Positions 1,273 to 50,821 of a stretch of DNA of 64,000 bases are shown here, piece by piece. Within the stretch, counting starts at the first letter, position 1, and each line of letters opens with the position of its first letter. The position numbers were made by a program, and so were the translations under genes. The stretch is from the NCBI RefSeq assembly GCF_902713615.1, contig NW_024055498.1, positions 1,578,527 to 1,642,526 on the forward strand, read 5' to 3'. Source of the DNA: Scyliorhinus canicula (Eukaryota). A model generated the notes under the pieces. That model made no database searches. It was not told the DNA's origin and saw only the letters and a program-made list of their open reading frames with translations.

Positions 1273-1664
1273 ATCCCAATCCGCGGGAACCGTCCGTCTC
1301 TGTCCTCCTGCCCTCGGCTGAAGACGTCTCCGCTCAGAGATTCGTCTCCCTCAGCTGCTTAGTGAGAGGTTTCTCCCCCCGAGAGATCTTCGTCAAGTGG
1401 ACCGTCAATGACAAGCCGGTGAATCCCGGGAACTACAAGAACACCGAGGTGATGGCGGAGAACGGCAATAGCTCCTTCTTCATGTACAGCCTGTTATCCA
1501 TTGCAGCGGAGGAGTGGGCCAGCGGCGCTTCTTACTCCTGTGTGGTGGGACATGAAGCCATCCCCTTGAAGATCATCAACAGAACGGTTGATAAATCCAG
1601 CGGTAAACCCAGTTTTGTGAACATTTCCCTCGCTCTGATGGACACCGTTAATTCATGTCAATGA
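1273..1664 (+). CDS. IGHM: IgM heavy chain last constant exon (Cmu4) plus secretory tailpiece
   Basis: After acceptor ttttctgcAG (1271-1272) reads [43 protein letters not shown]...[23 protein letters not shown]: C1-set Ig domain with Cys-Trp-Cys. Tailpiece [20 protein letters not shown] has the NIS glycosylation site and a penultimate Cys. Internal donor G|GTAAA at 1603 serves TM splicing. Confidence 0.95.
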
Positions 1665-1706: not shown

Positions 1707-2304
1707 AACGTTTCCTCTAATTGTGATTTAAACATACAGCCACTTGATTAATGGTGTTTCCACTTTACTGATGTTAGATCTGAAAATGAAATGAAAATCA
1801 CTTATTGTCACAAGTAGGCTTCAGTCAAGTTATTGTGAAAAGCCCCTCAGCGCCACATTCCGGCACCTGTTCGGGGAGGCTGGTACGGGAATTGAACCGT
1901 GCTGCTGGCCTGTCGTGGTCTGCTTTATAATCCAGCGATTTTAAACCAGTCTCTGGTCAATGAGACCCGGATTTCTACAGGTCTCAGCCCCAAGTCTGAT
2001 ACAACCAGAGCTCTCAGCTCAGAAACACCCTGGGTTAGAGACAGAGTAAAACTCATTCATTCCAGGATTCAGCAAAATATCTTCATTGACTTTCCTCCAG
2101 ATGAGGAGAAATCGGACAATTTCCCATTTCAGACAAACAAACCCATCACATTTAGATCTCGGTGTTCCTGCTTCTCTCATTGTCCATCCCTTTAAAATTA
2201 ATGTCAGCTTTAAGTTGCTGCATGAGACCCATTGGGAACTGATTTGAGGGTCACACAGAAACATGGACCAACAATCTCCAGTCAAAGAGAGGGGAAAGTG
2301 AAAT

Positions 2305-3215
2305 TGTTAATCCACTGTACCCCCACCTCCCCAACAGAGAGAGCGGGAGGGGTATTAGTTATTCCACTGTCTCCCCACCCACCCACCCACCTCCCACACA
2401 GAGAGAGGGGGAAGGGCATTAGTTAATCCACTGTACCCCCACTTCCCCAGTAGAGGGAGGGGAGGGGTATTAGTTAATCCACTGTACCCCCACTTCCCCA
2501 ATAGAGAGAGGGTCTTTAGTTAATTCACTGTACCCCCACTTCCCCAACATAGAGAGTGGGAGGAGCTTTAGTTAATCCATTGTACCCCCAATTCGCCAAC
2601 AAAGAGAGGAGAGGGGGGCATTAGTTAATCCACTGTACCCCACCTCACAATCAGAGAGAGTGGGAGGGGCTTTAGTTAATACACTGTACCCCCACTTCAC
2701 CAACAAAGAGAGGGGCATTAGTTAATCCATTGTCTCCCCACGTCCCCAACAAAGAGAGGGGTTGGGGCATTACTTAACACACTGTACCCCCACTTCCCCA
2801 GCAAAGCGAGGGGAGGAGCATTAGTTAACACACTGTGCCCCCACTTCCCCAGCAAAGCGAGGGGAGGAGCATTAGTTAACACATTGTGCCCCCACTTCCC
2901 CAACAAAGAGACGGTGGTGGGCTGAGTTAATCCACTGTACATCCGCTTCCAACAATGGGGGGGGGGGGGGGGGGGTGTACATTAGTTAATCCACTGTACA
3001 TCCGCTTCCAACAATGAGGGGGGGGGTGTACATTAGTTAATCCACTGTACATCCGCTTCCAACAATGAGGGGGGTGTACATTAGTTAATCCACTGGACAC
3101 CCGCTTCCAACAATGAGTGGAAGGACATTATTTAATCCACTGCCTCCCCACTTCCCCAACAAAGAGAGCTAAGGGGCAATACTAACCCGTTTTACCTCCA
3201 CTTTCCCAACCATAA
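2305..3215. repeat. Intronic minisatellite, ~50-60 bp unit, ~17 copies
   Basis: Recurrent core ATTAGTTAATCCACTGTACCCCCACTTCCCCAACAAAGAGAGGG. A variant sub-array at 2930-3120 carries poly-G tracts. Confidence 0.9.
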
Positions 3216-3714
3216 GAGGAGGAAGGTGATGAGTGAACTCTCTGTATCTCCACCTCCAACAGGGAGAACCCAAAGTCAATTTGCTGACCTGACCAGAGAG
3301 AGGGCGATTATTAACTCAATATCTTCCCAGTCCCCAAGCAGGGAGTTTGGAAGTAAACGGTTGTCTGGACTAAGAACTCAGTTACTGACATTACAAGACG
3401 CCATGTAGTTTACAGGCTGATACATGATAAAGATGTTCTTAAAATATCTATTTATGCAACATAATTTTTTTAGCACCCTTGTTCCTCTTATCCGTATGCT
3501 GAGACCGATTCCCCATAATCCAAATCCAGACTGGTGATTGAATTCTCTCTGGGTTTTCACTGTTCTCTCCCGAGGAGCCTCCTTGTTTTTTTGCATTAGG
3601 TCACCTGATGTCAACTTGCAACTCACGGAAAACATATTTATATGCAGAAAGTTCAACATATTCTACATCGGTATCAATAATACCCACAACTGGCAAAGCT
3701 ACAGGCAGCTGATA

Positions 3715-5389: not shown

Positions 5390-5517
5390 ATACCACAGAC
5401 AACACCTGGACTGAAGAAAATGAGGATGATAACGGGAACATCTGGACAACCGCTTCCACATTCATCACCCTGTTCTTCCTGAGCATTTCCTACAGCGCTG
5501 CTGTCACTCTGGTGAAG
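5390..5517 (+). CDS. IGHM: IgM transmembrane exon TM1
   Basis: Acceptor ccttgtAG 5388-5389; phase matches the 1602 donor. Reads DTTDNTWTEENEDDNGNIWTTASTFITLFFLSISYSAAVTLVK: acidic spacer plus CART-type TM helix. Donor GTGAGA at 5518. Confidence 0.93.
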
Positions 5518-5656
5518 GTGAGAAGATTCAATCCACTCACACTTCAAACTGACAGAGGCCGTTTAAAACATCTCTAAATGTTTGATTGATTAAAAACTCT
5601 AACATCAATGTCCCAGATCATAAACATCGGCTTCATCATTTCTCTCTCTTTTACAG

Positions 5657-19600: not shown

Positions 19601-20939
19601 CAGGTGATGATAAATTGGCGACTTTTCCAATGTCCTGTCAAACTGATTTAAAACAGAAAAAAGGGAGTGAAAGAGAACGCACATAAACACAAAGAGAGAG
19701 AGCGACGTGGAGCAGCAGGGTTGAAGGGGATGAAGTTTATACAGCTACAACTCGACAAAAGTCTGCCAACCATCAACATGAACCACCCAAAAGGACTGGG
19801 ATAGCAGGTATATATTAATAATAATAATCTTCCATATTGAACATCGTCATCTTGTGTTTCCCCTCCAGGTAACATACCGTCCTGACTAATCAGATATCCA
19901 GTACTGGATAAGCAGAAATTTCCTCTCTCAATTTAATTATTGACAAGACTGAAGCCTTGTCTTCAGTCCCAGCTATAAACTCCACTCCCTCACCAGTGGC
20001 TCCATCCCTCTCCCTGGGAACTGTCTGAATCAGACGGTTCACAACCTCAGTGTCACCTAAATATGGGTTTCCAACCACATCATAACCAAGACCGTTTATT
20101 TCCACCTCAGTGCTCGTCTCTCTCTCGCTGTGTAATTTCCTCTCTGCCCTTGACTCACTCTCTCTCTCTCTTATCTCCCCCCTGCTCGTCTTTCTCTTGT
20201 TAGTGAAAGGGCAGGGAAGTGGAAGAAGCTAATTTGCTCTTTCAGAGAGCTAGCACAGGCAAGACAGGCTGAATGGCCCCGACCCCTGTCTGTATTGTAA
20301 TCACTCAATGATTCAATGAAAAAAGACTTACACTGGAGGCGATGGACCAGATTCTTCCTCCGGACCCACCCTGCTACAAACTGCCTCTTAATTGGTCTGT
20401 CTGTGTTTCCATGAGCGACGCTTGCAATAAAAAAATCAAAATACTGCAGTTGCTGGAAAGCTGAAATAAAAAGTGGAAATGCTGGAAACACTCAGCAGGA
20501 TCTGTGGGGAGGGAAACAGATTTCACATTTTCACTTTGTGCAGAATGAACTGCAGGGAACAAAAATGGTCAATATAAGCTCAGAAGTGGAAGAGAAATGC
20601 ATTATGCCACAGGAAAAGCAATTCCTGACTCTGAAAGGTGCAGTGAGATGGTCGGGGGATGAGCAGTGATGGAAACCTCATGAAAAATGAAAATGAAAAT
20701 CGCTTATTGTCACGAGTAGGCTTCAATGAAGTTACTGTGAAAAGCCCCTAGTCGCCACATTCCGGCGCCTGTCCGGGGAGGCTGGTACGGGAATCGAACC
20801 GTGCTGTTGGCCTGTTTGGTCTGCTTTAAAAGCCAGCGATTTAGCTGAGTGAGCTAAACCAGCCCCTAGCTAAACCAGCCCCTGGTTTAGACATTTAGAC
20901 ATGGTCGATGGAAGTAACAATAACATTTAAAAAAAATTA

Positions 20940-29792: not shown

Positions 29793-32700
29793 TGTCATTC
29801 TTTAGTGCCATTAATTTCCTAATTACTGATGCTATACGCACGTTAATTGTATTCAGTCCCTGTCCTCTATCGACTACTAATTTTTTCGGGACTTCCGGCA
29901 AGTTATCGTTCTTTTCAACTGTAAACACTGAGGCAAAGTAATTGTTCAACATGTCTGCCATTTCCCCATTATCACTGACAATATCCCCATTTTCAGCTTT
30001 TATTGCGCCTACATTACTCTTGTCCACCCGCTTTCCCTTTATATAACTGTAACATTTCTTCTTATTGATTTTGATGTCCCTTTCAAGTTTCCTTTCATAA
30101 TCCCGTTTAGAAGCTCTTACAAGCTGCTTTACTGGCCTTTGTATCTATCCCATTTGTCCGGATCTGTGCATGTTTTGCATCATGTTGTGCATTTTTGTAC
30201 TCCCTCACATTTAGTTTTATGCTGCCCCTAACATCGTTAGTTGTCCAGGACTATTTTTTTTGTGTGAAGTGGAGCCTTTTCCTCTGAGGGATATATACTC
30301 ACTCTATATCTCATTAAATGTTTCTTTAAATATTCATTGATCTTCAGTTGTTAAACAGATGTTCCCAGTTTACCGTGGACGGTCTCTGTCTCATCCCGTT
30401 AAAGTCAGCCTTACCCAAATCTAAAATTCTAGTATCTGAATCATGCTTTTCACTTTCAAATGTAACATTGAATTCAATCATGTTATGATCACTATTTGAT
30501 AAATGCTCGCGCACAGTTAGGCTCCGACTTAAATTTGGTTCATTACTCAGAACTAAATCTAATATTTCCTGCCCCCTTGTTACATCTGGAACATATTGCC
30601 GCAGGAAACTATCCCGGACACATTCCAGAAATTCCCTATCTTTCTGACAGCTGCTTGTCTGCCTCTCCCAATCTGCCTCAGTTAAAATCCCCCGTTAATA
30701 CGACTTTGCCTAATTTCTGCATTTATATAATCCAGCACCTTAGAACTGCTATCTGGGTGTCGATACACAACACCCATTACAGTTTAGAACTTTTTCTGTT
30801 CCTCAGTTCCACCCATATGGTCTCCACTTGATATTTTCCCCTCATTCTATCCTCCCTCATCATTGAGGTGGTAGTATTTTTTTTTTAATAAAATTTTTTT
30901 AAATACCCAATTAATTTTTTTCAATTAAGGGGCAATTTAGCATGGCCAATCCACACACCCAGCACATCTTTTGGGTTGTGGGGACGAAACTCATGCAAAC
31001 ACGGGGAGAATTCACAAACTCCACATGGACAGTAACCCACAGCCGGGATTAAACCAGGGTCGTCAGTGCCGTGAGGCAGCAGTGCTAACCACTGCGCCAC
31101 CATGCTGCGGTGATAGGATTTCCAAGCAGTAAGGCTACTCCACTCCCTTGGCCATCTTCCCTGTTCCTCCTGTAAACTTTATAACCGGTATATTTAATTC
31201 CCAGTCCTGACCATCTGGCAGCCATATCTCCATAATCGCTGTCGCTATGGAGGCTAAATCACTAAGTGTCTTTAAGGCAGAGTTGGAACTGGGCAGAACG
31301 GTGGCGCAATGGTTAGCACTGCTGCCTCACGGCGCCACGATCCCAGGTTCGATCCCGGCTCTGGGTCACTGTCCATGTTGTGTTTGCACATTCTCCCCGC
31401 GCTTTTCAAGGAGACACATCCTGAGTGAAACACATCGAGAGTGGGATTGCAACTTGGTAATTTGGTGCAGTGAGGTAATTCGGTGCAGAGTGAGAGAAGG
31501 TGCTTTTTAACCCTGGTAAGTGACTGGTAAGTAGTTTTTCTTTTCATTGTCTAATTTATTTATTTTTATTTTGAAATTGTTGTTGTATAAGTTTACCTAA
31601 GGTTTAAGACATGGCAGGAGATCCCAGACCCGTGTCATGCTCCTCGTGTGCGATGTGGGAGCTCAGGGATACGTCCACTGTCCCTGGCTCTTTCACGTGC
31701 AAGAAGTGTGTTCAGTTGCAGCTCCTGTTAGACCGCTTGACGGCTCTGGAGCTCCGGATGGACTCACTTTGGAGCATCCGCGATGCTGAGGAGGTCGTGG
31801 ATAGCATGTTTAGCGAGTTGGTCACACCGCAGGTGAAAGTTACTGAGGGAGATAGCAAATGGGTGACCAAAAGAAAGAGCAAGAGTAGGAAGGCAGTGCA
31901 GGTGTCCCCTGCGGTCATCTCCCTGCAAAACAGGTATACCGCTTTGGATACTGTTGAGGGAGATGGCTCACCAGGGGAAGGCAGCAGAGGCCAGGTTCAT
32001 GGCACCATGGCTGGCTCTGCTGCACAGCAGGGCAGGAAGAAAAATGGCAGGGCTATAGTGATAGGGGACTCGATCGTTAGGGGAATAGACAGGCGGTTCT
32101 GTGGACGCAATCGAGACTCCAGGACGGTATGTTGCCTCCCTGGTGCAAGGGTCAAGGATGTCTCGGAGCGGCTGCAGGACATTCTGGGGGGGTGAACAGC
32201 CAGCTGTCGTGCTGCACATAGGCACCAACGATATAGGTAAAAAACGGGATGAGGTCCAACAAGCGGAATTCAGGGAGTTAGGAGTTAAACTAAAAAGTAG
32301 GACCTCAAAGGTAGTAATCTCAGGATTGCTACCAGTGCCACGACCTAGTCAGAGTAGGAATGTCAGGATAGATAGGATGAATGCGTGGCTCGAGAGATGG
32401 TGCAAGAGGGAGGGATTCAAATTCCTGGGGCATTGGGACCGGTTCTGGGGAGGTGGGACCAGTACAAATCGGACGGTCTGCACCTGGGCAGGACTGGAAC
32501 CGATGTCCCACGGGGGGGTGTTTTCCAGAGCTGTTGGGGAAGGTTTAAACTAATGTGGCAGGGGGATGGGAACCGATGCAGGAAGTTGGAAGGTAGTAAA
32601 ACAGGGACAGAAGCAAAAGGAAATAAGGGGAAAAGTGCAATGCAGAGAAGACATAGTCAAAAATCTAAAAGGGCGACAGTACAAGGTACAGTGACTGAGG

Positions 32701-43531: not shown

Positions 43532-44167
43532 TTTTTTAAATAAACAATTTTATTGAGGTATTTTTGGCATTGTAAACAGTTACAGTAATGTGCAAATATC
43601 AACACAAAGCAGAAACATAGTTCAAAAGACCACTCCTCTCATAAACAGTACCCACCTATTTATCCCCCCTATTCTACTCTAATCTCTCCCCCCCCCCCCC
43701 CCCCCCCCCCCGCTGACATTTAATTCCCAGCGAAGAAGTCGATGAATGGTTGCCACCTTCGGGCGAACCCTAATACAGATCTTCTTAAGGCAAACTTATT
43801 TTATCCAGCCCTAAATAGCTCAACATGTCTGAGAGCCATGCTTCGGTCTTTGAGTCCCTCCATGCCAGCAGTTTACATCGCCAGGCTACCAGGGAAGCAA
43901 AGGCCAAGACGTCAGTCTCCCTCTCCTCCTGGACACCCGGGTCTTCCAAGACCCCAAAAATTGCCACCACTGGACTCATCACCACCCTGGTTTTCAGTAT
44001 CTGGGACATGACGTTTGCAAATCCCTCCCAGTATCTCCTAAGTTTTGGGCATGCCCAGAAGATGTGGACGTGATTTGCTGCCCCTCCCGCACACCTAGCG
44101 CATTTGTCCTCCACCCCAAAAAAATTACTCATCTGGGCCACCATCATGTGGGCCTGGTGGACGGGAA
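43532..44167 (-). mobile_element. 5'-truncated L1-clade 3' end with 13-bp TSD
   Basis: CARC..HIFWACPKLRRYW..AFASLVAWR. 3' end matches 17320-17347. TGGGTTCAGTCTT at 43519-43531 and 44168-44180. Confidence 0.88.
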
Positions 44168-45006
44168 TGGGTTCAGTCTTGTCAATATTTAAATAGAGGA
44201 AAGTTCTGCTCCTCCAGCATTGGATGTCTGACAAGATCGGACAGTGTGTGTCTTGGAAGGGAACTTGCAGGTGGTGATGTTCACATACATCTGCTGTCCT
44301 GGTCCATCCAGGTGGTGGAGGTCAAATATTTAGGAGATTCTGTCAAATTGTGATTCAGTTGTCAGTCGAGAAAATGCCTCTCCAATGCCACCTATCACCC
44401 CCACCCCCTTTCTCGCTTTCTCTCCCTTTCCCTCATTCTTTTTTACTTTCTCTCTCGGTCTTTTGCTGAGAATTCTCTCGCCCAGAGGGTTGTGGGTGAT
44501 CCATCAATGAATATATTGAAGGCTGAGATGGTGAGATTTTTGGTCTCTCAGGAAGTCAAAGGACATAGAGAGCTAACGGGAAAGTGGAATTGAAGACTGA
44601 GATCAGCCACAATCGTGTTCAATGGCAGAGCAGGGTCGACGGGCCGAATGGTCTACTTCTCCTATTCTTGTGTTCTTGCAGAGGCCTGATTCTTGTGTGG
44701 GCTCAGGCCGGGTGGCCGGTTCCCTTCCCTGAAGGACATTAACAAACTAGTTCACTTTCCACAAAATATTCAACAGTTTTCATGGTCACTTATTCCCGTT
44801 GCCGGCCCCACAAGTTACTAGATTCATTCAGCTCAATTTCACAACCTGTTTTTGTGGGTTCTCTCTCATTCCCTTTTTTCTGTTTTAAATCAATTTCAGA
44901 GTTAGAAGGGGAGGATTTGCAGTCAGGAAACTCAGATCAAACATTACATCAGGATCAGACAACGTCACCGAATTCACCGTAACCTGAATATTGGTGATTT
45001 TTGACC

Positions 45007-45883
45007 ATGGAAGGAAAAAGCAGCGTTCACAGTGAGGAGAAACCGTGGGAATGTGAGGAGGGATTCAGATCCACATCTCAACTGGAAATTCATCATCCCA
45101 GACACTCTGGTCGTGGGAAGAAATTATTTTGATCATCCAGCAGGCTGCAACACCAGTGAGTGCACACTGGGGAGAAACCATTCAACTGCTGCATGTGGGA
45201 AAGGATTCGCTCGGTCATTTGACTTGAAGACGCACATGCGAGTTCACAGGGATGAGAGACCATTTAAATGTCCAGACTGTGGGAAGTGCTGTAAATGTTC
45301 CCGGGCACTAATACTCCATCAACGTGTTCACACCAACGAGCGACCGTTCAGTTTCTCTCACCAGCGCACTCACACTGGGGAGAGGCCGTTCACCTGCTCT
45401 GTGTGTGGCAGTGGGTTCAGTAGGTCATCAAACCTGCGGACACACCAATGGGTTCACTCTGGGGAGAGACCTTACACTTGCTCTGAGTGTGGGAAGGGAT
45501 TCACTCAGTTATCCACTCTGCTGAATCACCAGAGTATTCACAATGAGAGGAGACCATTTAAATGTACAGACTGCAGTAAGTGCTATAAAAGTTCCCGGGA
45601 ACTGCTCCACCATCAGCGTGTTCACACTGATGAGAGACCTTTTCAATGCCCAGACTTTGAGAAGTGCTTTAAAAGTTCCGGGGAACTGATGCATCATCAA
45701 CATATTCACACTGATGAGAAACCGTTCAGGTGCTCCTGCTGCGGAACTGGGTTCAAGACATCATCTGACCTCACTGTACACCAGCGAACTCACACTGGGG
45801 AGAGGCCGTTCACCTGCCCCAATTGTGGGAAGAGATTCACTCAGTCATCCAGCCTGCTGACACACCAGCGAATTCACAAGTAA
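45007..45883 (+). pseudogene. C2H2 zinc-finger locus ZF5, frameshifted at the 5' end (about 6 intact fingers downstream)
   Basis: Family-type start ATG GAA GGA AAA AGC (45007) is out of frame with the finger array. One finger is internally deleted (FSFSHQRTH) and one has CPDF. Confidence 0.7.
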
Positions 45884-46703
45884 TTACAGTGAGTGGACAA
45901 TCTGATCAGCTGCCTCTGCTGCTTCCCTCCCTTCCATGAGCTCCACCAGGCCAAACTGTCACTAAAACTCCCCCTCGTCTGAGTGTGAATTCAGATCTAT
46001 CTCTAGGTTCTCTCCTATTTCCTGTCATGTCCTGTTCAATCTCATCTTGTTTATGAGACCTGACTTCTGCTCCCTTGACCCGATTCTCACTAAACCGCTG
46101 ACCATCCAACTTCCCCACATTAACTGATATTGTTCACAGTTCTCGCTTTCTTCTGGTTTTGCCACTACACTATCCTCACCTTTCCTGAGAAACCAACCCT
46201 TGATGCCCAACCTCCTTGCAAACGGCCATCCCATCTCCAACCTCCCTTTCCTCTCCAACAAGGATCTCTCCTTGGCCCCTCCTATTTCTCATCAACATGA
46301 TGGTACTAGAATCTATAGAATCCCTACACTTTCCATTGGGAATTTGGCCAACGCGCAGGCGCTTTGCCGGCCCGTTTGACTTGGACCGACTGAGCATGCG
46401 TGGCTCTGACATGTACTCGGCATATTTAAAGGGTCAGTGTCCCTTTGCTGTTGCAATTTAAAGGGTCAGATGTTGCGAGCCTGATTTGAACGCAGATAAG
46501 GGAGAATAGGTTTTGTGGCTTCAAAAATAATGTAAAGTTAGAAAACTATCCACCCTCAATTTCTGCATTTTTTTCTTTGCAGGAATTACTGATATAAATG
46601 ATTAAACAAGGAGTGGATTCACAGACAGGATGCTCTGACTCCCAGGCACCACATCAATCTAACCGAGTCACTTAATTAATCAGGACTCAGTAACATTGGC
46701 CAT

Positions 46704-47579
46704 ATGGAAGGAGAGAGCGGCATTCACAGCGCAGGCAATCTGTACACGTCTTCAGCGTGTGGACCTGGATTTAACTATTCGACCAATATGGGAAGACACA
46801 CGTGTGACCTGAAAAGGGAAGGTCTGTCTGGACAATGTGGGGGTGTTGGGAAGGGATTCAGTTGTCATCCCTCTGATCAGGAGATGTATCGATACAGTCA
46901 CACCGGGACAAGGCCATTCACCTGCCCGCAGTGTGACAAGGGATTCACTCGATTTTCAAATATGTTGCGACACCAGCAGGTTCACACTGGGGAGAAACCC
47001 TTCAATTGTTCCCAGTGCGGAAAGCGATTCACTCAGTCATCCCACTTGCTGACACATCAACGGGTCCACACTGGAGAGAGACCATTCACCTGCTCAGTGT
47101 GTGAAAAGAGATTCACGGAGTCATCCACCCTGCTGAGACACCAGCGAGTTCACACTGGGGAGAGGCCTTTCACCTGCTCTGTGTGTGGGAAGGAATTTAC
47201 TGAGTCATCAATCCTGCTGAGACACCAGCAGGTTCACACTGGGGAGAGGCCATTCACCTGCTCTGTGTGTGGGAGGGGATTCACTCAATCATCCAACCTT
47301 GTGAGACACCAGCGAGTTCACACTGGGGAGAGGCCTTTCACCTGCTCTGTGTGTGGGAAGGAATTTACTGAGTCATCAATCCTGCTGAGACACCAGCAGG
47401 TTCACACTGGAGAGAGGCCATTCACCTGCTCAGTGTGTGAAAAGAGATTCACGGAGTCATCGGCCCTGCTGAGACACCAGCGAGTTCACACTGGGGAGAG
47501 GCCATTCCCCTGCTCTGTGTGTGGGAAGGGATTCACTCAATCATCCAACCTTGTGAGACACCAGCGAGTTCACAAGTGA
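46704..47579 (+). CDS. C2H2 zinc-finger protein ZF6 (8 intact fingers, degenerate N-terminal fingers)
   Basis: 291-aa ORF; acceptor ttctttgcAG near 46581. Confidence 0.88.
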   Translation: MEGESGIHSAGNLYTSSACGPGFNYSTNMGRHTCDLKREGLSGQCGGVGKGFSCHPSDQEMYRYSHTGTRPFTCPQCDKGFTRFSNMLRHQQVHTGEKPFNCSQCGKRFTQSSHLLTHQRVHTGERPFTCSVCEKRFTESSTLLRHQRVHTGERPFTCSVCGKEFTESSILLRHQQVHTGERPFTCSVCGRGFTQSSNLVRHQRVHTGERPFTCSVCGKEFTESSILLRHQQVHTGERPFTCSVCEKRFTESSALLRHQRVHTGERPFPCSVCGKGFTQSSNLVRHQRVHK

Positions 47580-48867
47580 CTGCAATGTTCCAATTCTGCA
47601 GTTATTCCTGCTGTTAATCAGATTTAGGAGTAAAACGTGTTCATTATGAAACAGGGGAGTGTCTATGCTGTTGCTGATAGCCACAGTAACCAGGTTGCAG
47701 TTGGAAGACTTTGCATTTATAATAATAATAATCTTTATTGTCACACGTAGGCTTACATTAACACTGCAATGAAGTTACTATGAAAATCCCCTCGTCGCCA
47801 CATTCCAGCGCCTGCTTGGGTACACGGCGGGAGAATTCAGAATGTCTAAATTACCTAACAGCATGTCTTTCTGGATTGTGGGAGGAAACCAGAGCACCCA
47901 GAGGAAAACAACACAGGCACAGGGAGAACTCTGCACTGACAGTGCCCAAAGCAGGGAATCGAACCTGGGCCTTTGCAGTATATAGTGCCTTTCACAACTT
48001 CAGATGTCTCTGTTCGCCTCCAAAACAGCAATGTGATAATGACCAGTGATTTTGTTTTTAGTGAGTTTGATTGCGAGTAAGCTATTAGTCAGAGAGCAGT
48101 GAGAACTCCCCCTACTGTCCTTCTAACAATGCTCGGAGATTTTGTTTAATAATATTACTCCAGAATAGATAAGGGGAACCAATGGATGTGGTGCATTTGG
48201 ATCTTCAGAAGACTTTTGATAAACTCCCACAGAGAAGGTTAATAAACAAGATTGGGGGGGGGGGGGGGGGGGGGGGGGCGGGGGAGTATAATGGCACGGA
48301 TTGAGGATTCACAGAAAACAGAGAGTAGGAATAATCAGGTCATTTTCAGGTTGGCAGACTGAATAGTGAGGTACGGGAAGGATCAGTACTTGGGCTCCAG
48401 CTATTCACAATCTACATCAATGATTTGGATGTGGGGACTAAATGCAATATTTCCATGTTTGCTGATGACTCAAAACTAGGTGAGAATATGCATTGTGAGG
48501 AGAGTACAAGGAGGATTCAAGATGAGTAACGCAAACTGAACATCATGTCAAGATCTGACACAGTCACTTGATTCATCAGGACCTGAATATCATCAGCCTT
48601 TGAATGTGGAAGGAGAAATGTTTGTCTGTTCTGTCTGTGGGAAAAGATTTCAAATATCAGTGTGACTGGAAAAGCACCGAGACCCACACAACACACACCC
48701 GAGTGAGAGTGTTCCAATGAACTGACTGTGGAAAGAGCTTTTACCAGTTACACAGCCTGAAGAAACATTACACCATTCACAGTGAGGAGAGACAGTGCAC
48801 ATGTTCTATGTCTGATCAAGATTGCAACTGATCATCCATCCTGGAGAGACACAAGGACACTGGCACC

Positions 48868-49374
48868 ATGAAGAAACCTTGGAAATGTGGGGACTGTGGG
48901 AAGGGATTCAGTTACCCATCCCAGCTGGAGAGCCATCGGCGCAGTCATACTGGGGAGAGACCGTTCACCTGCTCCATGTGTGGGAAGGGATTCACAAAGT
49001 CATCCAGCCTGGGGTCGGATCAGAGAGTTCACAGTGATGAGAGACCTTTTAAATGCTTTTACTGTGGGGATTCCTTTAAAACCTCTCCAGATCTAATTAA
49101 ACACCAGCTTGTTCACACTGACAAGAGACCATTCAGTTGCTCTCATTGTGAGAAGAGATTCAGACAATCGTCTCACCTTATTCAACACCAGCAAATTCAC
49201 ACTGGGGAAAGGATATTCACCTGCTCCGTGTGCAGAAAACAATTCACTCAATCATCCAATCTCCAGAAACACCAACACATTCACAGTGGGGAGAAGCTGT
49301 TCACCTGCCCCGAGTGTGGGAAGGGATTCAATCGATCATCCAACCTGCTGAGACACCAGCGGGTTCATGTGTGA
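48868..49374 (+). CDS. C2H2 zinc-finger protein ZF7 (6 fingers, 1 broken) preceded by the fossil leader 48540-48860
   Basis: MKKPWKCGDC...HQRVHV*; leader near-identical to that of ZF1. Confidence 0.8.
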   Translation: MKKPWKCGDCGKGFSYPSQLESHRRSHTGERPFTCSMCGKGFTKSSSLGSDQRVHSDERPFKCFYCGDSFKTSPDLIKHQLVHTDKRPFSCSHCEKRFRQSSHLIQHQQIHTGERIFTCSVCRKQFTQSSNLQKHQHIHSGEKLFTCPECGKGFNRSSNLLRHQRVHV

Positions 49375-50043
49375 CTGCAGGAGTTGGGTGTTGGGTAACA
49401 CGGTAGCCTTGTGGATAGCACAATTGCTTCACAGCTCCAGGGTCCCAGGTTCGATTCCGGCTTGGGTCACTGTCTGTGTGGAGTCTGCACGTCCTCCCCG
49501 TGTGTGTGTGAGTTTTCTCCGGGTGCTCCGGTTTCTTCCCACAGTCCAAAGATGTGCAGGTTAGGTGGATTGGCCATGATAAATTGTCCTTAGTGTCCAA
49601 AATTGCCCTTAGTGTTGGGTGGGGTTACTGGGTTATGGGGATAAGGTGGAGGTGTTGACCTTGGGTAGGGTGCTCTTTCCAAGAGCCGGTGCAGACTCGA
49701 TGGGCTGAATGGCCTTCTTCTGCACTGTAAATTATATCTTTGATAATCACATCCTTTGTTTATTTCTGTTCAAGTTAATAACCCCTATAAGTGGGCTGGA
49801 GTTTGATGTTGTCCACAGGACAGGTGATGTGCCGGGATTGCAGTATGTGGGAGTTTTTGGAGAACATTGCCATCCTGGACAATCATATCTGCGGGAGTGT
49901 CTGTAACTTGCAGAATCTGGGCTCAGGGTTATTGAGCTGGAGTCTGAGCTGCTGACATTGTGGGGCATCAAGGGGGGGGGGGGGGGGAAGTCACCTGTAC
50001 ACTTCCCCAAAGTTCAGTAGAAAGTTGCAGTGGGTGGGGGACT

Positions 50044-50149
50044 CGATTTTCTGCATCATTCGACAGTTTGAAATGTGTGGGGATAAGTGAGGAATGATCA
50101 GTGAGCTCCGGCTGTCTGACAGCTCGATGTATTACTGCAGGCTCAGAGA
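50044..50149 (+). pseudogene. Orphan antigen-receptor V-segment 3' remnant, TCR alpha/delta-like
   Basis: 50097-50149 encodes ISELRLSDSSMYYCRLR(D), the FR3 D-x-x-x-Y-Y-C motif. RFSASFDSLK at 50044-50073 is out of frame. No leader, FR1 or FR2; upstream DNA (49830-50000) looks like CR1 ORF1. Confidence 0.8.
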
Positions 50150-50188
50150 CTCAGTGACAGGAACCAGAGGGAACCTCATACAAAAACA
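50150..50188 (+). other. 23-bp-spacer recombination signal sequence with variant heptamer
   Basis: CTCAGTG (50150-50156) + exactly 23 nt + ACAAAAACA (50180-50188), directly after the V end. Consensus is CACAGTG/ACAAAAACC. Confidence 0.85.
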
Positions 50189-50821
50189 CTGTTGCAGTGG
50201 GACATGATGAATGGAGCAGTGGGCTGTGGCGGAAGTTATGTGGAGTTCTAGCATTTAACAGACAATAACGTCCCGACAATGTGTCCACAGACAGCTCTCA
50301 TCAGCTCTGAAGAGAGAAGTCAGATTTCATGCCCTTATATTTTTCTGCTCTATTTGATATGCCACTGATAGAGGATAACCAGAACAAATCTTACCCTTTT
50401 TATGTCCCCAGTGGAAGATTAATCAGAACCCACCCCGTCACCAAGCTCAGTCTAATTCATGACAGTGAGTGAAATATGGGCAGCACGGTAGCACAGTGGT
50501 AAGCACTGTTGCTTCACAGCGCCAGGGACCCGGGTTCGATTCCAGGCTTGGTCACTGTCTGTGCGGAGTCTGCACGTTCTCCCCGTGTCGTTGTGGGTTT
50601 CCTCCGGGTGCTCCGGTTTCCTCCCACAAGTTCCGAAATACTTCCTTACTCGGTGATTTAAACATTCTGAATTCTCCCTCAGTCTACCTGAACTGGCATC
50701 AGAGTGTGGCAACTAGGTGCTTTTCACAGTAAATTCATCGCAGTGTTAATATAAGCCTACTTGTAACACTAATAAAGATTATTATTAAACAGGACATCTC
50801 CATCTACATTCAACACAGGTT

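What the first reader, a model, noticed from the sequence alone, without database searches (positions are those of the whole stretch)
50044..50188. Orphan TCR-alpha/delta-like V end with an intact-geometry 23-RSS, 44 kb downstream of an IgM cluster
Seen: ISELRLSDSSMYYCRLR(D), then heptamer CTCAGTG, exactly 23 nt and nonamer ACAAAAACA, in the same orientation as the IgM gene, among ZF genes and retroelements. Established: VH and TCR alpha/delta V segments carry 23-RSS; shark VH ends about YYCAR, whereas the LSDS..YYCxLRD ending is TRAV/TRDV-like; Ig-TCR delta chimeric rearrangements are known in sharks. Inference: either this IgM cluster lies in or near remnants of a TCR alpha/delta region, or a V end was relocated, possibly by RAG or segmental duplication. 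The CAC-to-CTC change should inactivate RAG cleavage.
Basis: partly seen in the sequence, partly recalled or inferred. Interest (0 to 1): 0.8.

Follow-up and report, generated by a model that had tools for sequence, protein, structure and literature searches.

The report
Dead T-cell-receptor V gene fragment
This is the broken back half of a T-cell-receptor alpha/delta-type V gene segment, with its recombination signal still attached but mutated, lying 44 kb behind an antibody (IgM) gene in a catshark; such V segments between shark IgM clusters were described in 2025, so it is an ordinary fossil.

Summary
At 50097-50149 (+) the sequence reads ISELRLSDSSMYYCRLRD. It is followed by CTCAGTG, exactly 23 nt, then ACAAAAACA. 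This is the only such V end and the only RSS with 2 or fewer mismatches in the 64 kb window.

It is a V pseudogene relic. Only CDR2-FR3 survives (about 50002-50149). A 5-nt insertion shifts the frame and creates a TGA. FR1, CDR1, FR2 and the leader are gone, replaced by a poly-G run and a LINE ORF1 fragment. Heptamer position 2 is A-to-T.

The TCR alpha/delta assignment holds:
- An index-free phmmer search of 1.84 billion proteins gave 60 hits. Forty-six are C-(A/G/V)-L-x V ends read through a 23-RSS, one is VH-like and none is VL-like.
- The closest relatives are two bamboo-shark V segments, 81% identical in DNA across FR3, heptamer, spacer and nonamer.
- The RSS starts at nucleotide 15 from the Cys codon, the modal position for shark and teleost V-alpha.

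The window is Scyliorhinus canicula. Flajnik et al. 2025 already report TCR-alpha/delta-type V exons between elasmobranch IgH clusters. This scan has also noted the same juxtaposition many times elsewhere in this genome, for example s1-286373 and s1-278436.

RAG-mediated relocation is not supported. Interest is low.

The parts
50002..50149 (+). Remnant of a V exon (CDR2 to the end of FR3) of a TCR alpha/delta-type V segment. RFSASFDS is at 50044-50067, ISELRLSDSSMYYCRLRD at 50097-50149, and the Cys104 codon at 50136-50138.
   Evidence: tblastn of the bamboo-shark V protein P0030: residues 38-65 match 50002-50082 and residues 69-87 match 50097-50153. blastn gives 81% identity to L002 and L001 over 50101-50199. 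MAFFT alignment A1 supports this. phmmer hits are.
50084..50090 (+). Inactivating lesion: about 5 extra nucleotides relative to the bamboo-shark relatives (exact placement depends on the alignment). They shift the frame and give an in-frame TGA at 50088-50090.
   Evidence: Alignment A1, columns 107-111; translations.
50150..50156 (+). RSS heptamer CTCAGTG. Position 2 is T instead of A. It starts at nucleotide 15 counted from the first base of the Cys codon.
   Evidence: The relatives have CACAGTG (L002) and CACGGTG (L001). Position 15 is the modal V-alpha RSS position in the bamboo shark and in zebrafish (PMC10322711).
50157..50179 (+). 23-nt RSS spacer.
   Evidence: The whole RSS block (heptamer, spacer and 8 of the 9 nonamer bases; 50150-50187) is 82% (L002), 76% (L001) and 76% (L003) identical to the RSSs of those V segments. 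Its translation TGTRGNLIQK matches RSS read-throughs of V-alpha gene models.
50180..50188 (+). RSS nonamer ACAAAAACA (8 of 9 to the consensus ACAAAAACC).
49972..49987 (.). Run of 16 G at the junction where V homology ends on the 5' side.
49791..49971 (+). Fragment of the N-terminal part of a LINE ORF1 (Cys-rich MCRDCSMWEF... then a coiled-coil-like ELESELLTL). It is 3'-truncated at the poly-G and occupies the place of the missing V 5' half.
   Evidence: It resembles the intact ORF1 start at 31611-32195 by inspection only; blastn and tblastx found no significant match within the window.
49392..49737 (+). tRNA-derived SINE copy upstream of the block.
   Evidence: Repeat families D16-D18.
50477..50628 (+). 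SINE copy downstream of the block.
   Evidence: Repeat family D17, 84% identical to the 49392 copy.
1290..1664 (+). IgM CH4 exon with secretory tail, the reference point of the finding. The TM1 exon is at about 5440-5565.

Best explanation
The block is a non-functional fossil of a germline TCR alpha/delta-type V gene segment. It belongs to a shark V lineage whose intact members end in ...LQLSDSAVYYCGLRD followed by a 23-RSS.

It sits in the catshark antigen-receptor complex, where IgM miniclusters and TCR alpha/delta-type V segments are interspersed. Inference: it was once an ordinary V segment of that region and was left behind.

It has been inactivated at least three times:
- Loss of the leader, FR1, CDR1 and FR2. 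The break is now a poly-G run abutting a 3'-truncated LINE ORF1 fragment. Inference: a deletion or rearrangement after a LINE insertion.
- A 5-nt insertion in FR3 that shifts the frame and creates a TGA.
- An A-to-T change at heptamer position 2.

The first three heptamer bases (CAC) are the part of the RSS needed for RAG nicking (established knowledge, Hesse et al. 1989). The signal should therefore be essentially uncleavable. The fragment does nothing today.
For: Shown directly:
- Sequence and geometry.
- The phmmer search of the 37-aa ORF against 1.84 billion representatives gave 60 hits at E of 0.001 or better. Forty-six have C-(A/G/V)-L-x ends followed by a heptamer read-through, 1 is VH-like and 0 are VL-like.
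- The informative names among the hits looked up are TCR alpha V (Ictalurus; Pelobates).
- The best hits are P0012 and P0030, V-set proteins of Chiloscyllium punctatum. Their loci align to the relic at 81% DNA identity over 88-99 nt spanning the FR3 end, heptamer, spacer and nonamer, with blastn E of 1e-21 and 2e-18.
- Homology extends back to about 50002.
- A profile of these V domains retrieves 463 proteins. Every named hit among the 120 listed is TCR alpha or alpha/delta V.
- The heptamer begins at nucleotide 15 from the Cys codon. In PMC10322711 this holds for 86.8% of shark V-alpha, for 99.2% of expressed zebrafish V-alpha, and is the commonest value in the bamboo-shark TRAV table.
- The window is GCA_902713615.2, scaffold CACTIT020000075.1. 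That accession is Scyliorhinus canicula in PMC10322711 supplement 6.
Against: - Only about 150 nt of coding sequence survives, so the class assignment rests on FR3 and the RSS.
- The closest full-length relatives (P0012, P0030) are atypical. They lack Cys23 and Trp41.
- Against solved mammalian structures they score about as well with Ig lambda light chains as they do with teleost V-alpha. The lineage may be one of the 'intermediate' V types mentioned in PMC12227049.
- I could not read the scaffold outside the window. The neighbouring TCR V arrays are known only from unchecked scan notes.
- Genome-wide copy number could not be measured because read laying failed.
Confidence: 0.87

Rival explanations
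1. It is the relic of an Ig V segment: a VH of a decayed IgM/IgW minicluster, or a light-chain V, rather than a TCR-type V.
For: - It lies next to an IgM gene, and a 23-RSS is also carried by VH.
- MYYC is common in shark VH (my own knowledge).
- PDB searches with the fragment and with P0012/P0030 return mostly antibody V domains. That library is dominated by antibodies, and a canonical V-alpha-like control (P0053) behaves similarly.
Against: - Only 1 of 60 unbiased phmmer hits is VH-like and none is VL-like.
- The motif is L-S-D-S-x-x-Y-Y-C-x-L-R-D, not E-D-T-A-x-Y-Y-C-A-R.
- The heptamer starts at nucleotide 15 from the Cys codon. A VH ending TGT GCx AGA GA puts it at 12, and light-chain V segments encode most of CDR3 and put it well beyond 20 (established knowledge).
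- No D or J segment and no 12-RSS follows within the window, unlike a shark V-D-D-J minicluster.
Confidence: 0.06
2. A V end was moved here from the TCR alpha/delta locus by RAG-mediated transposition, by retroelement transduction, or by a small segmental duplication.
For: - The fragment is 5'-truncated and abuts a LINE fragment and SINEs.
- A duplicated TCR J cassette has been noted elsewhere in this genome (s1-246653; unchecked by me).
Against: - RAG excision separates the coding end from the RSS. Here they are contiguous in germline form, so a RAG transposition product is excluded on mechanistic grounds.
- There is no poly(A) tail and none was seen by eye downstream of the RSS; target-site duplications were not searched for.
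- The adjoining LINE piece is the 5' end of ORF1, not a 3' end that could transduce downstream DNA.
- Interspersion of TCR-type V segments among IgH clusters is the normal state of this region (PMC12227049), so no special relocation is needed.
- A local duplication cannot be excluded without the whole genome.
Confidence: 0.05
3. It is a chance resemblance, or part of a repeat consensus that merely looks like a V end plus RSS.
For: A repeated element in the window carries an RSS-like 23-spacer pattern with 3 mismatches, in three copies (43453, 50941; a 22-spacer version at 20739). RSS-like strings therefore do occur in repeats here.
Against: - There is 81% DNA identity over about 99 nt to bona fide open V exons with RSSs in another shark.
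- A pattern with 2 or fewer mismatches is expected 0.11 times per window.
- The YYC motif is unique in six frames.
- No second copy exists in the window.
Confidence: 0.02

Closest known systems
TCR alpha/delta-type V exons interspersed among IgH miniclusters in the elasmobranch antigen-receptor complex (Flajnik et al., Sci Adv 2025, PMC12227049)
   Same: Same species group (catshark is one of the four genomes analysed) and same arrangement: a TCR alpha/delta-type V with a 23-RSS lying between or next to IgM clusters.
   Different: This copy is a truncated, frameshifted fossil with a mutated heptamer. The paper describes V domain exons in general, and its coordinate table was not available to me, so I cannot say whether this fragment was listed.
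Chiloscyllium punctatum V segments GCC45228.1 (P0012, locus L002) and GCC20152.1 (P0030, locus L001)
   Same: They share the FR3 (RFS..D.S..EG...I.EL.LSDS..YYC.LRD), the RSS position, the spacer and the nonamer. DNA identity is 81% over the FR3 end plus RSS.
   Different: Those are open, full-length V exons with CAC heptamers. They carry Phe at the Cys23 position and Leu/Val at the Trp41 position. The relic has lost that part, so it cannot be scored for these residues.
Fish V-alpha segments with the 'primordial' RSS position 15 (Giorgetti et al., Nature 2023, PMC10322711)
   Same: The heptamer begins at nucleotide 15 from the Cys codon. The coding end is of the TG(T/C) xxx CTx AGA xx type, and the spacer begins ACAGGAA as in many teleost V-alpha read-throughs.
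   Different: Those elements are functional and expressed. This one cannot be.
TAILV and Ig-TCR delta trans-rearrangement in sharks (cited in PMC12227049)
   Same: Both reflect the physical intermingling of Ig and TCR delta/alpha gene segments.
   Different: TAILV are IgH-like V segments inside the TCR locus. This is the converse, a TCR-like V beside an IgM gene, and it is dead, so it contributes to no chimeric receptor.

Membership tests
Germline rearranging V gene segment (functional) | V-set FR3 ending in the conserved Y-Y-C (Cys104) | tested here: met
   ISELRLSDSSMYYC at 50097-50138. Pfam V-set matches weakly, E 0.11, profile positions 77-98. phmmer hits are.
Germline rearranging V gene segment (functional) | RSS with a CAC-initiated heptamer, a 12- or 23-nt spacer and an A-rich nonamer directly after the coding end | tested here: not met
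   The spacer (23 nt) and nonamer (8/9) are correct, but the heptamer is CTCAGTG.
Germline rearranging V gene segment (functional) | Leader exon plus an uninterrupted V exon with FR1 (Cys23) and FR2 (Trp41) | tested here: not met
   tblastn with six V domains finds only residues corresponding to CDR2-FR3. There is a 5-nt insertion and a TGA at 50088-50090. Upstream are a poly-G run and a LINE fragment.
TCR alpha/delta V type (TRAV/TRDV) | FR3 end of the type L-x-L-S-D-S-A-x-Y-Y-C-(A/G)-L-R, with nearest relatives being TCR alpha/delta V segments | tested here: met
   46 of 60 phmmer hits are of this type, and named ones are TCR alpha V. In the profile search every named hit is TCR alpha or alpha/delta V (its word-based candidate step may favour DSAVYYC-containing proteins).
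TCR alpha/delta V type (TRAV/TRDV) | 23-RSS beginning at nucleotide 15 from the Cys codon | tested here: met
   The Cys codon starts at 50136 and the heptamer at 50150, which is position 15. The reference distribution comes from PMC10322711.
TCR alpha/delta V type (TRAV/TRDV) | Located in a V array upstream of TRD D/J/C and TRA J/C, and used with C-alpha or C-delta | not testable with these tools
   No J, D or C segment lies in the window. Neighbouring arrays are known only from scan notes and from PMC12227049. Expression is impossible for a truncated segment.
IgH V (shark IgM/IgW VH) | E-D-T-A-x-Y-Y-C-A-R end with the heptamer about 11 nt after the start of the Cys codon, followed within about 1-2 kb by D and J segments with 12-RSSs | tested here: not met
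   The motif and RSS position differ. No further RSS was found. Only one VH-like protein is among the 60 hits.
Ig light-chain V | Germline V encodes most of CDR3 (6 or more codons after Cys). Shark kappa/sigma types carry a 12-RSS. | tested here: not met
   Only 11 nt follow the Cys codon, and the spacer is 23 nt. No VL-like hit was found.
High-copy transposon or repeat | Multiple copies with the same flanks | tested here: inconclusive
   There is no second copy in 64 kb. Genome-wide depth could not be measured.

The most novel reading that the evidence does not exclude
The relic may mark the presence in catshark of a shark V lineage (C-G-L-R-D ending) that I could not find described (not searched for in the literature). 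Its intact members in the bamboo shark have Phe in place of the canonical Cys23 and Leu/Val in place of Trp41. They nevertheless keep open frames and CAC-type 23-RSSs, and have diverged under purifying selection: 60% amino-acid identity, dN/dS 0.24 at dS 1.15. That would be a disulfide-less alpha/delta-type V domain family conserved across shark orders. It could be one of the 'intermediate' V types lying between IgH clusters.
Probability: 0.2. Interest if true: 0.5.

Novelty: new member of a known kind. Interest (0 to 1): 0.15.

Why it matters
Little on its own. It is one more decayed V segment, and it confirms at base-pair level that TCR alpha/delta-type V segments lie beside IgM genes in the catshark, which is already published. 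Two modest uses remain. It is a marker for annotating the catshark antigen-receptor complex. It is also a pointer to the unusual C-G-L-R-D V lineage that lacks Cys23 and Trp41 in the bamboo shark.

Tried and rejected
I therefore have no read depth, no paralogue variants and no expression data.
- The first look-up of sequencing runs attempt failed. The second shows only that one organism in 8 studies holds the stretch, and no holder is on record as RNA.
- The search for homologous proteins with the fragment read through its break with X found no candidate, because three shared 5-mers are required. With P0012 alone it returned only itself.
- PDB sequence searches confirm a V-domain FR3 but cannot separate TCR from Ig. 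Multi-V antibody constructs dominate, and even the canonical V-alpha-like control P0053 hits antibodies first.
- I looked for the CTCF-like motif 21-25 nt behind the nonamer that other scan notes report for V genes of this genome. The best match is 10 of 14 positions, no better than random 100-nt windows, and nothing is conserved in L001-L003. Rejected for this lineage.
- The 10 kb either side of P0030 in the bamboo shark holds no other V, so that locus gives no context.
- Supplements of PMC10322711 hold TRAV coordinates and RSS positions but no sequences. I could not tell whether the C-G-L-R-D lineage is expressed with C-alpha. PMC12227049 has no supplement held.
- Within-window blastn and tblastx found no relative of the 49760-50480 block.

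Full report
**1. Observation.**
- In one frame, RFSASFDS lies at 50044-50067.
- After a frame change, ISELRLSDSSMYYCRLRD lies at 50097-50149, with the Cys codon at 50136-50138.
- Then come CTCAGTG (50150-50156), a spacer of exactly 23 nt, and ACAAAAACA (50180-50188), all on the + strand.
- The IgM CH4/secretory-tail exon (about 1290-1664) and the TM1 exon (about 5440-5565) are on the same strand. The block is therefore about 44.5 kb behind TM1.

The RSS-23 consensus with 2 or fewer mismatches occurs once in 64 kb on both strands, against 0.11 expected from shuffles. A D-S-x-x-Y-Y-C type motif occurs once in six frames. The two are joined in the exact register of a V gene, so chance is not a serious option. 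No other copy of the block exists in the window.

**2. Anatomy.**
tblastn with V domains found later shows that V homology runs from about 50002 (CDR2) to the coding end at 50149, and nowhere else in the window. Alignment with the closest relatives (A1) gives these identities:

| Segment | Identity |
|---|---|
| 5' part of FR3 | 64% |
| 3' part of FR3 | 69-72% |
| RSS | 76-82% |

Similarity fades beyond the nonamer.

Relative to those relatives, the relic has about five extra nucleotides near 50084-50088. These shift the frame and produce the TGA at 50088-50090.

Upstream of about 50002 there is no FR2, CDR1, FR1 or leader. Instead there is a run of 16 G (49972-49987). Before it lies a piece that reads like the N-terminus of a LINE ORF1, cut off at its 3' side. 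SINE copies bracket the whole (49392-49737 and 50477 onward).

I infer, without proof, that a deletion or rearrangement after a LINE insertion removed the front half of the V gene.

**3. What kind of V.**
An index-free phmmer search of the 37-residue ORF (window 50094-50204) against 1.84 billion representative proteins returned 60 hits at E of 0.001 or better.
- Forty-six are V domains ending C-(A/G/V)-L-x whose gene models read on through the heptamer and spacer. The regex count was 45, plus P0030, which has HYC in place of YYC.
- One is VH-like and none is VL-like.
- The remaining 13 comprise large non-rearranging Ig-superfamily proteins and two weak hits with no V-like motif (P0016, P0047).
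- Informative names among the hits looked up are TCR alpha V (Ictalurus; Pelobates).

The three best matches continue through the translated spacer and nonamer (TGTRGNLIQK versus TGTRVSLVQK, TGNRGRLVQK and TGTHGSLIQK). The RSS itself is therefore homologous.

Two of the three are hypothetical V-set proteins of the brownbanded bamboo shark. I fetched their loci, L002 and L001. They align to the relic at 81% DNA identity over 99 and 88 nt, covering the FR3 end, heptamer, spacer and nonamer.
- Their heptamers are CACAGTG and CACGGTG, so the T at position 2 of the relic is a derived lesion.
- Their Cys+1 codon is Gly, so the ancestral end was C-G-L-R-D. The relic's Arg is a G-to-A change.

A profile of these V domains retrieved 463 proteins. 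Every named hit among the 120 listed is TCR alpha or TCR alpha/delta V. The caveat is that this tool's word-based candidate step may favour DSAVYYC-containing proteins.

An independent geometric criterion agrees. The heptamer starts at nucleotide 15 counted from the first base of the Cys codon. Giorgetti et al. 2023 (PMC10322711) give these figures:
- 99.2% of expressed zebrafish V-alpha have this position.
- 86.8% of shark V-alpha have it.
- It is the commonest value in their bamboo-shark TRAV table.

By established knowledge, a VH ending TGT GCx AGA GA puts the heptamer at 12. Light-chain V segments put it far later.

Comparison with solved structures did not discriminate.

**4. Context and identity of the genome.**
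A zinc-finger ORF of the window is found exactly in GCA_902713615.2, scaffold CACTIT020000075.1 (4.93 Mb). That assembly accession is listed as Scyliorhinus canicula in PMC10322711 supplement 6.

Flajnik et al. 2025 (PMC12227049) analysed catshark, great white shark, epaulette shark and a stingray. [quoted passage not shown] Unchecked notes of this scan say the same for this genome:
- An IgM 3' end joined to a TCR alpha/delta V array 119 kb upstream on the same scaffold (s1-278436).
- V genes 117 kb and 791 kb upstream (s1-278496, s1-300713).
- Another orphan TCR-like V next to an IgM C region (s1-286373).
- Many IgM clusters beside TCR V arrays.

**5. Mechanism.**
The fragment has no function today. 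Its frame is broken, its front half is missing, and its heptamer has lost the CAC triplet that RAG needs for nicking. That last point is established knowledge (Hesse et al. 1989), not tested here.

Relocation by RAG is not supported. RAG cuts precisely between the coding end and the heptamer, and here they remain joined as in any germline V. Retro-transduction is also unsupported. There is no poly(A) tail; target-site duplications were not searched for. The neighbouring LINE piece is a 5' portion, not a 3' end. A small local duplication cannot be excluded without the whole genome.

**6. What I could not do.**
- I could not read the scaffold outside the window.
- The class assignment rests on about 150 nt of coding sequence plus the RSS.

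**7. Side observation.**
The two bamboo-shark relatives are open V exons with RSSs. However, they carry Phe where Cys23 should be and Leu or Val where Trp41 should be.
- They are 60% identical in protein, with dN/dS 0.24 at dS 1.15.
- This suggests constraint after the loss of the canonical disulfide partner.
- Their nearest canonical relative found is a coelacanth V ending YYCGLWEA.
- Against mammalian structures they score about as well with lambda light chains as they do with teleost V-alpha.
- They may belong to the 'intermediate' V types of PMC12227049.
- The relic has lost the relevant part, so it says nothing about these residues in catshark.

**8. Verdict.**
The TCR alpha/delta-type assignment and the dead RSS are supported. 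RAG relocation is not supported. The arrangement is already published and has been seen repeatedly in this genome by this scan. This is a new, decayed member of a known kind, and interest is low.

Noticed in passing
L002:87-443 and L001:10001-10299 (Chiloscyllium punctatum; proteins P0012, P0030): The two closest intact relatives of the relic are open V exons with CAC-type 23-RSSs. They have Phe at the Cys23 position and Leu/Val at the Trp41 position. They are 60% identical, with dN/dS 0.24 (dS 1.15). This may be a disulfide-less alpha/delta-type V lineage under constraint.
   Followed up: partly
window 2291-3270: A minisatellite of about 20 copies of a 51-52-nt unit (GTTAATCCACTGTACCCCCACTTCCCCAACAAAGAGA...) lies in the intron between the IgM CH4/secretory exon and TM1. 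Each unit contains a CACTGTA heptamer-like string.
   Followed up: no
window 20739 (-), 43453 (-), 50941 (+): A dispersed repeat (family D19) carries an RSS-like string, CACAGTA + 22-23 nt + ACAATAAGC (3 mismatches). One copy lies 750 bp downstream of the relic. I read this as a chance resemblance inside a repeat, not a signal.
   Followed up: partly
L004:1-6876 (= window about 43704-50579), minus strand: The public annotation has a minus-strand gene model (383-aa product) that spans the whole locus, so the relic lies inside an intron or extended span of that model. Several small runs of uncertain type (RNA or DNA) hold the stretch. Transcription is untested.
   Followed up: no
window 50189-50288; L001-L003 downstream of their nonamers: The CTCF-like motif 21-25 nt behind V RSS nonamers, reported by other notes for this genome, is not detectable here. 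The best match is 10 of 14 positions, equal to background.
   Followed up: yes
window 48868-49374 (+): A six-finger C2H2 zinc-finger ORF ends only 18 nt before the SINE that precedes the relic. The window holds at least ten such ZNF ORFs on both strands around the relic.
   Followed up: no
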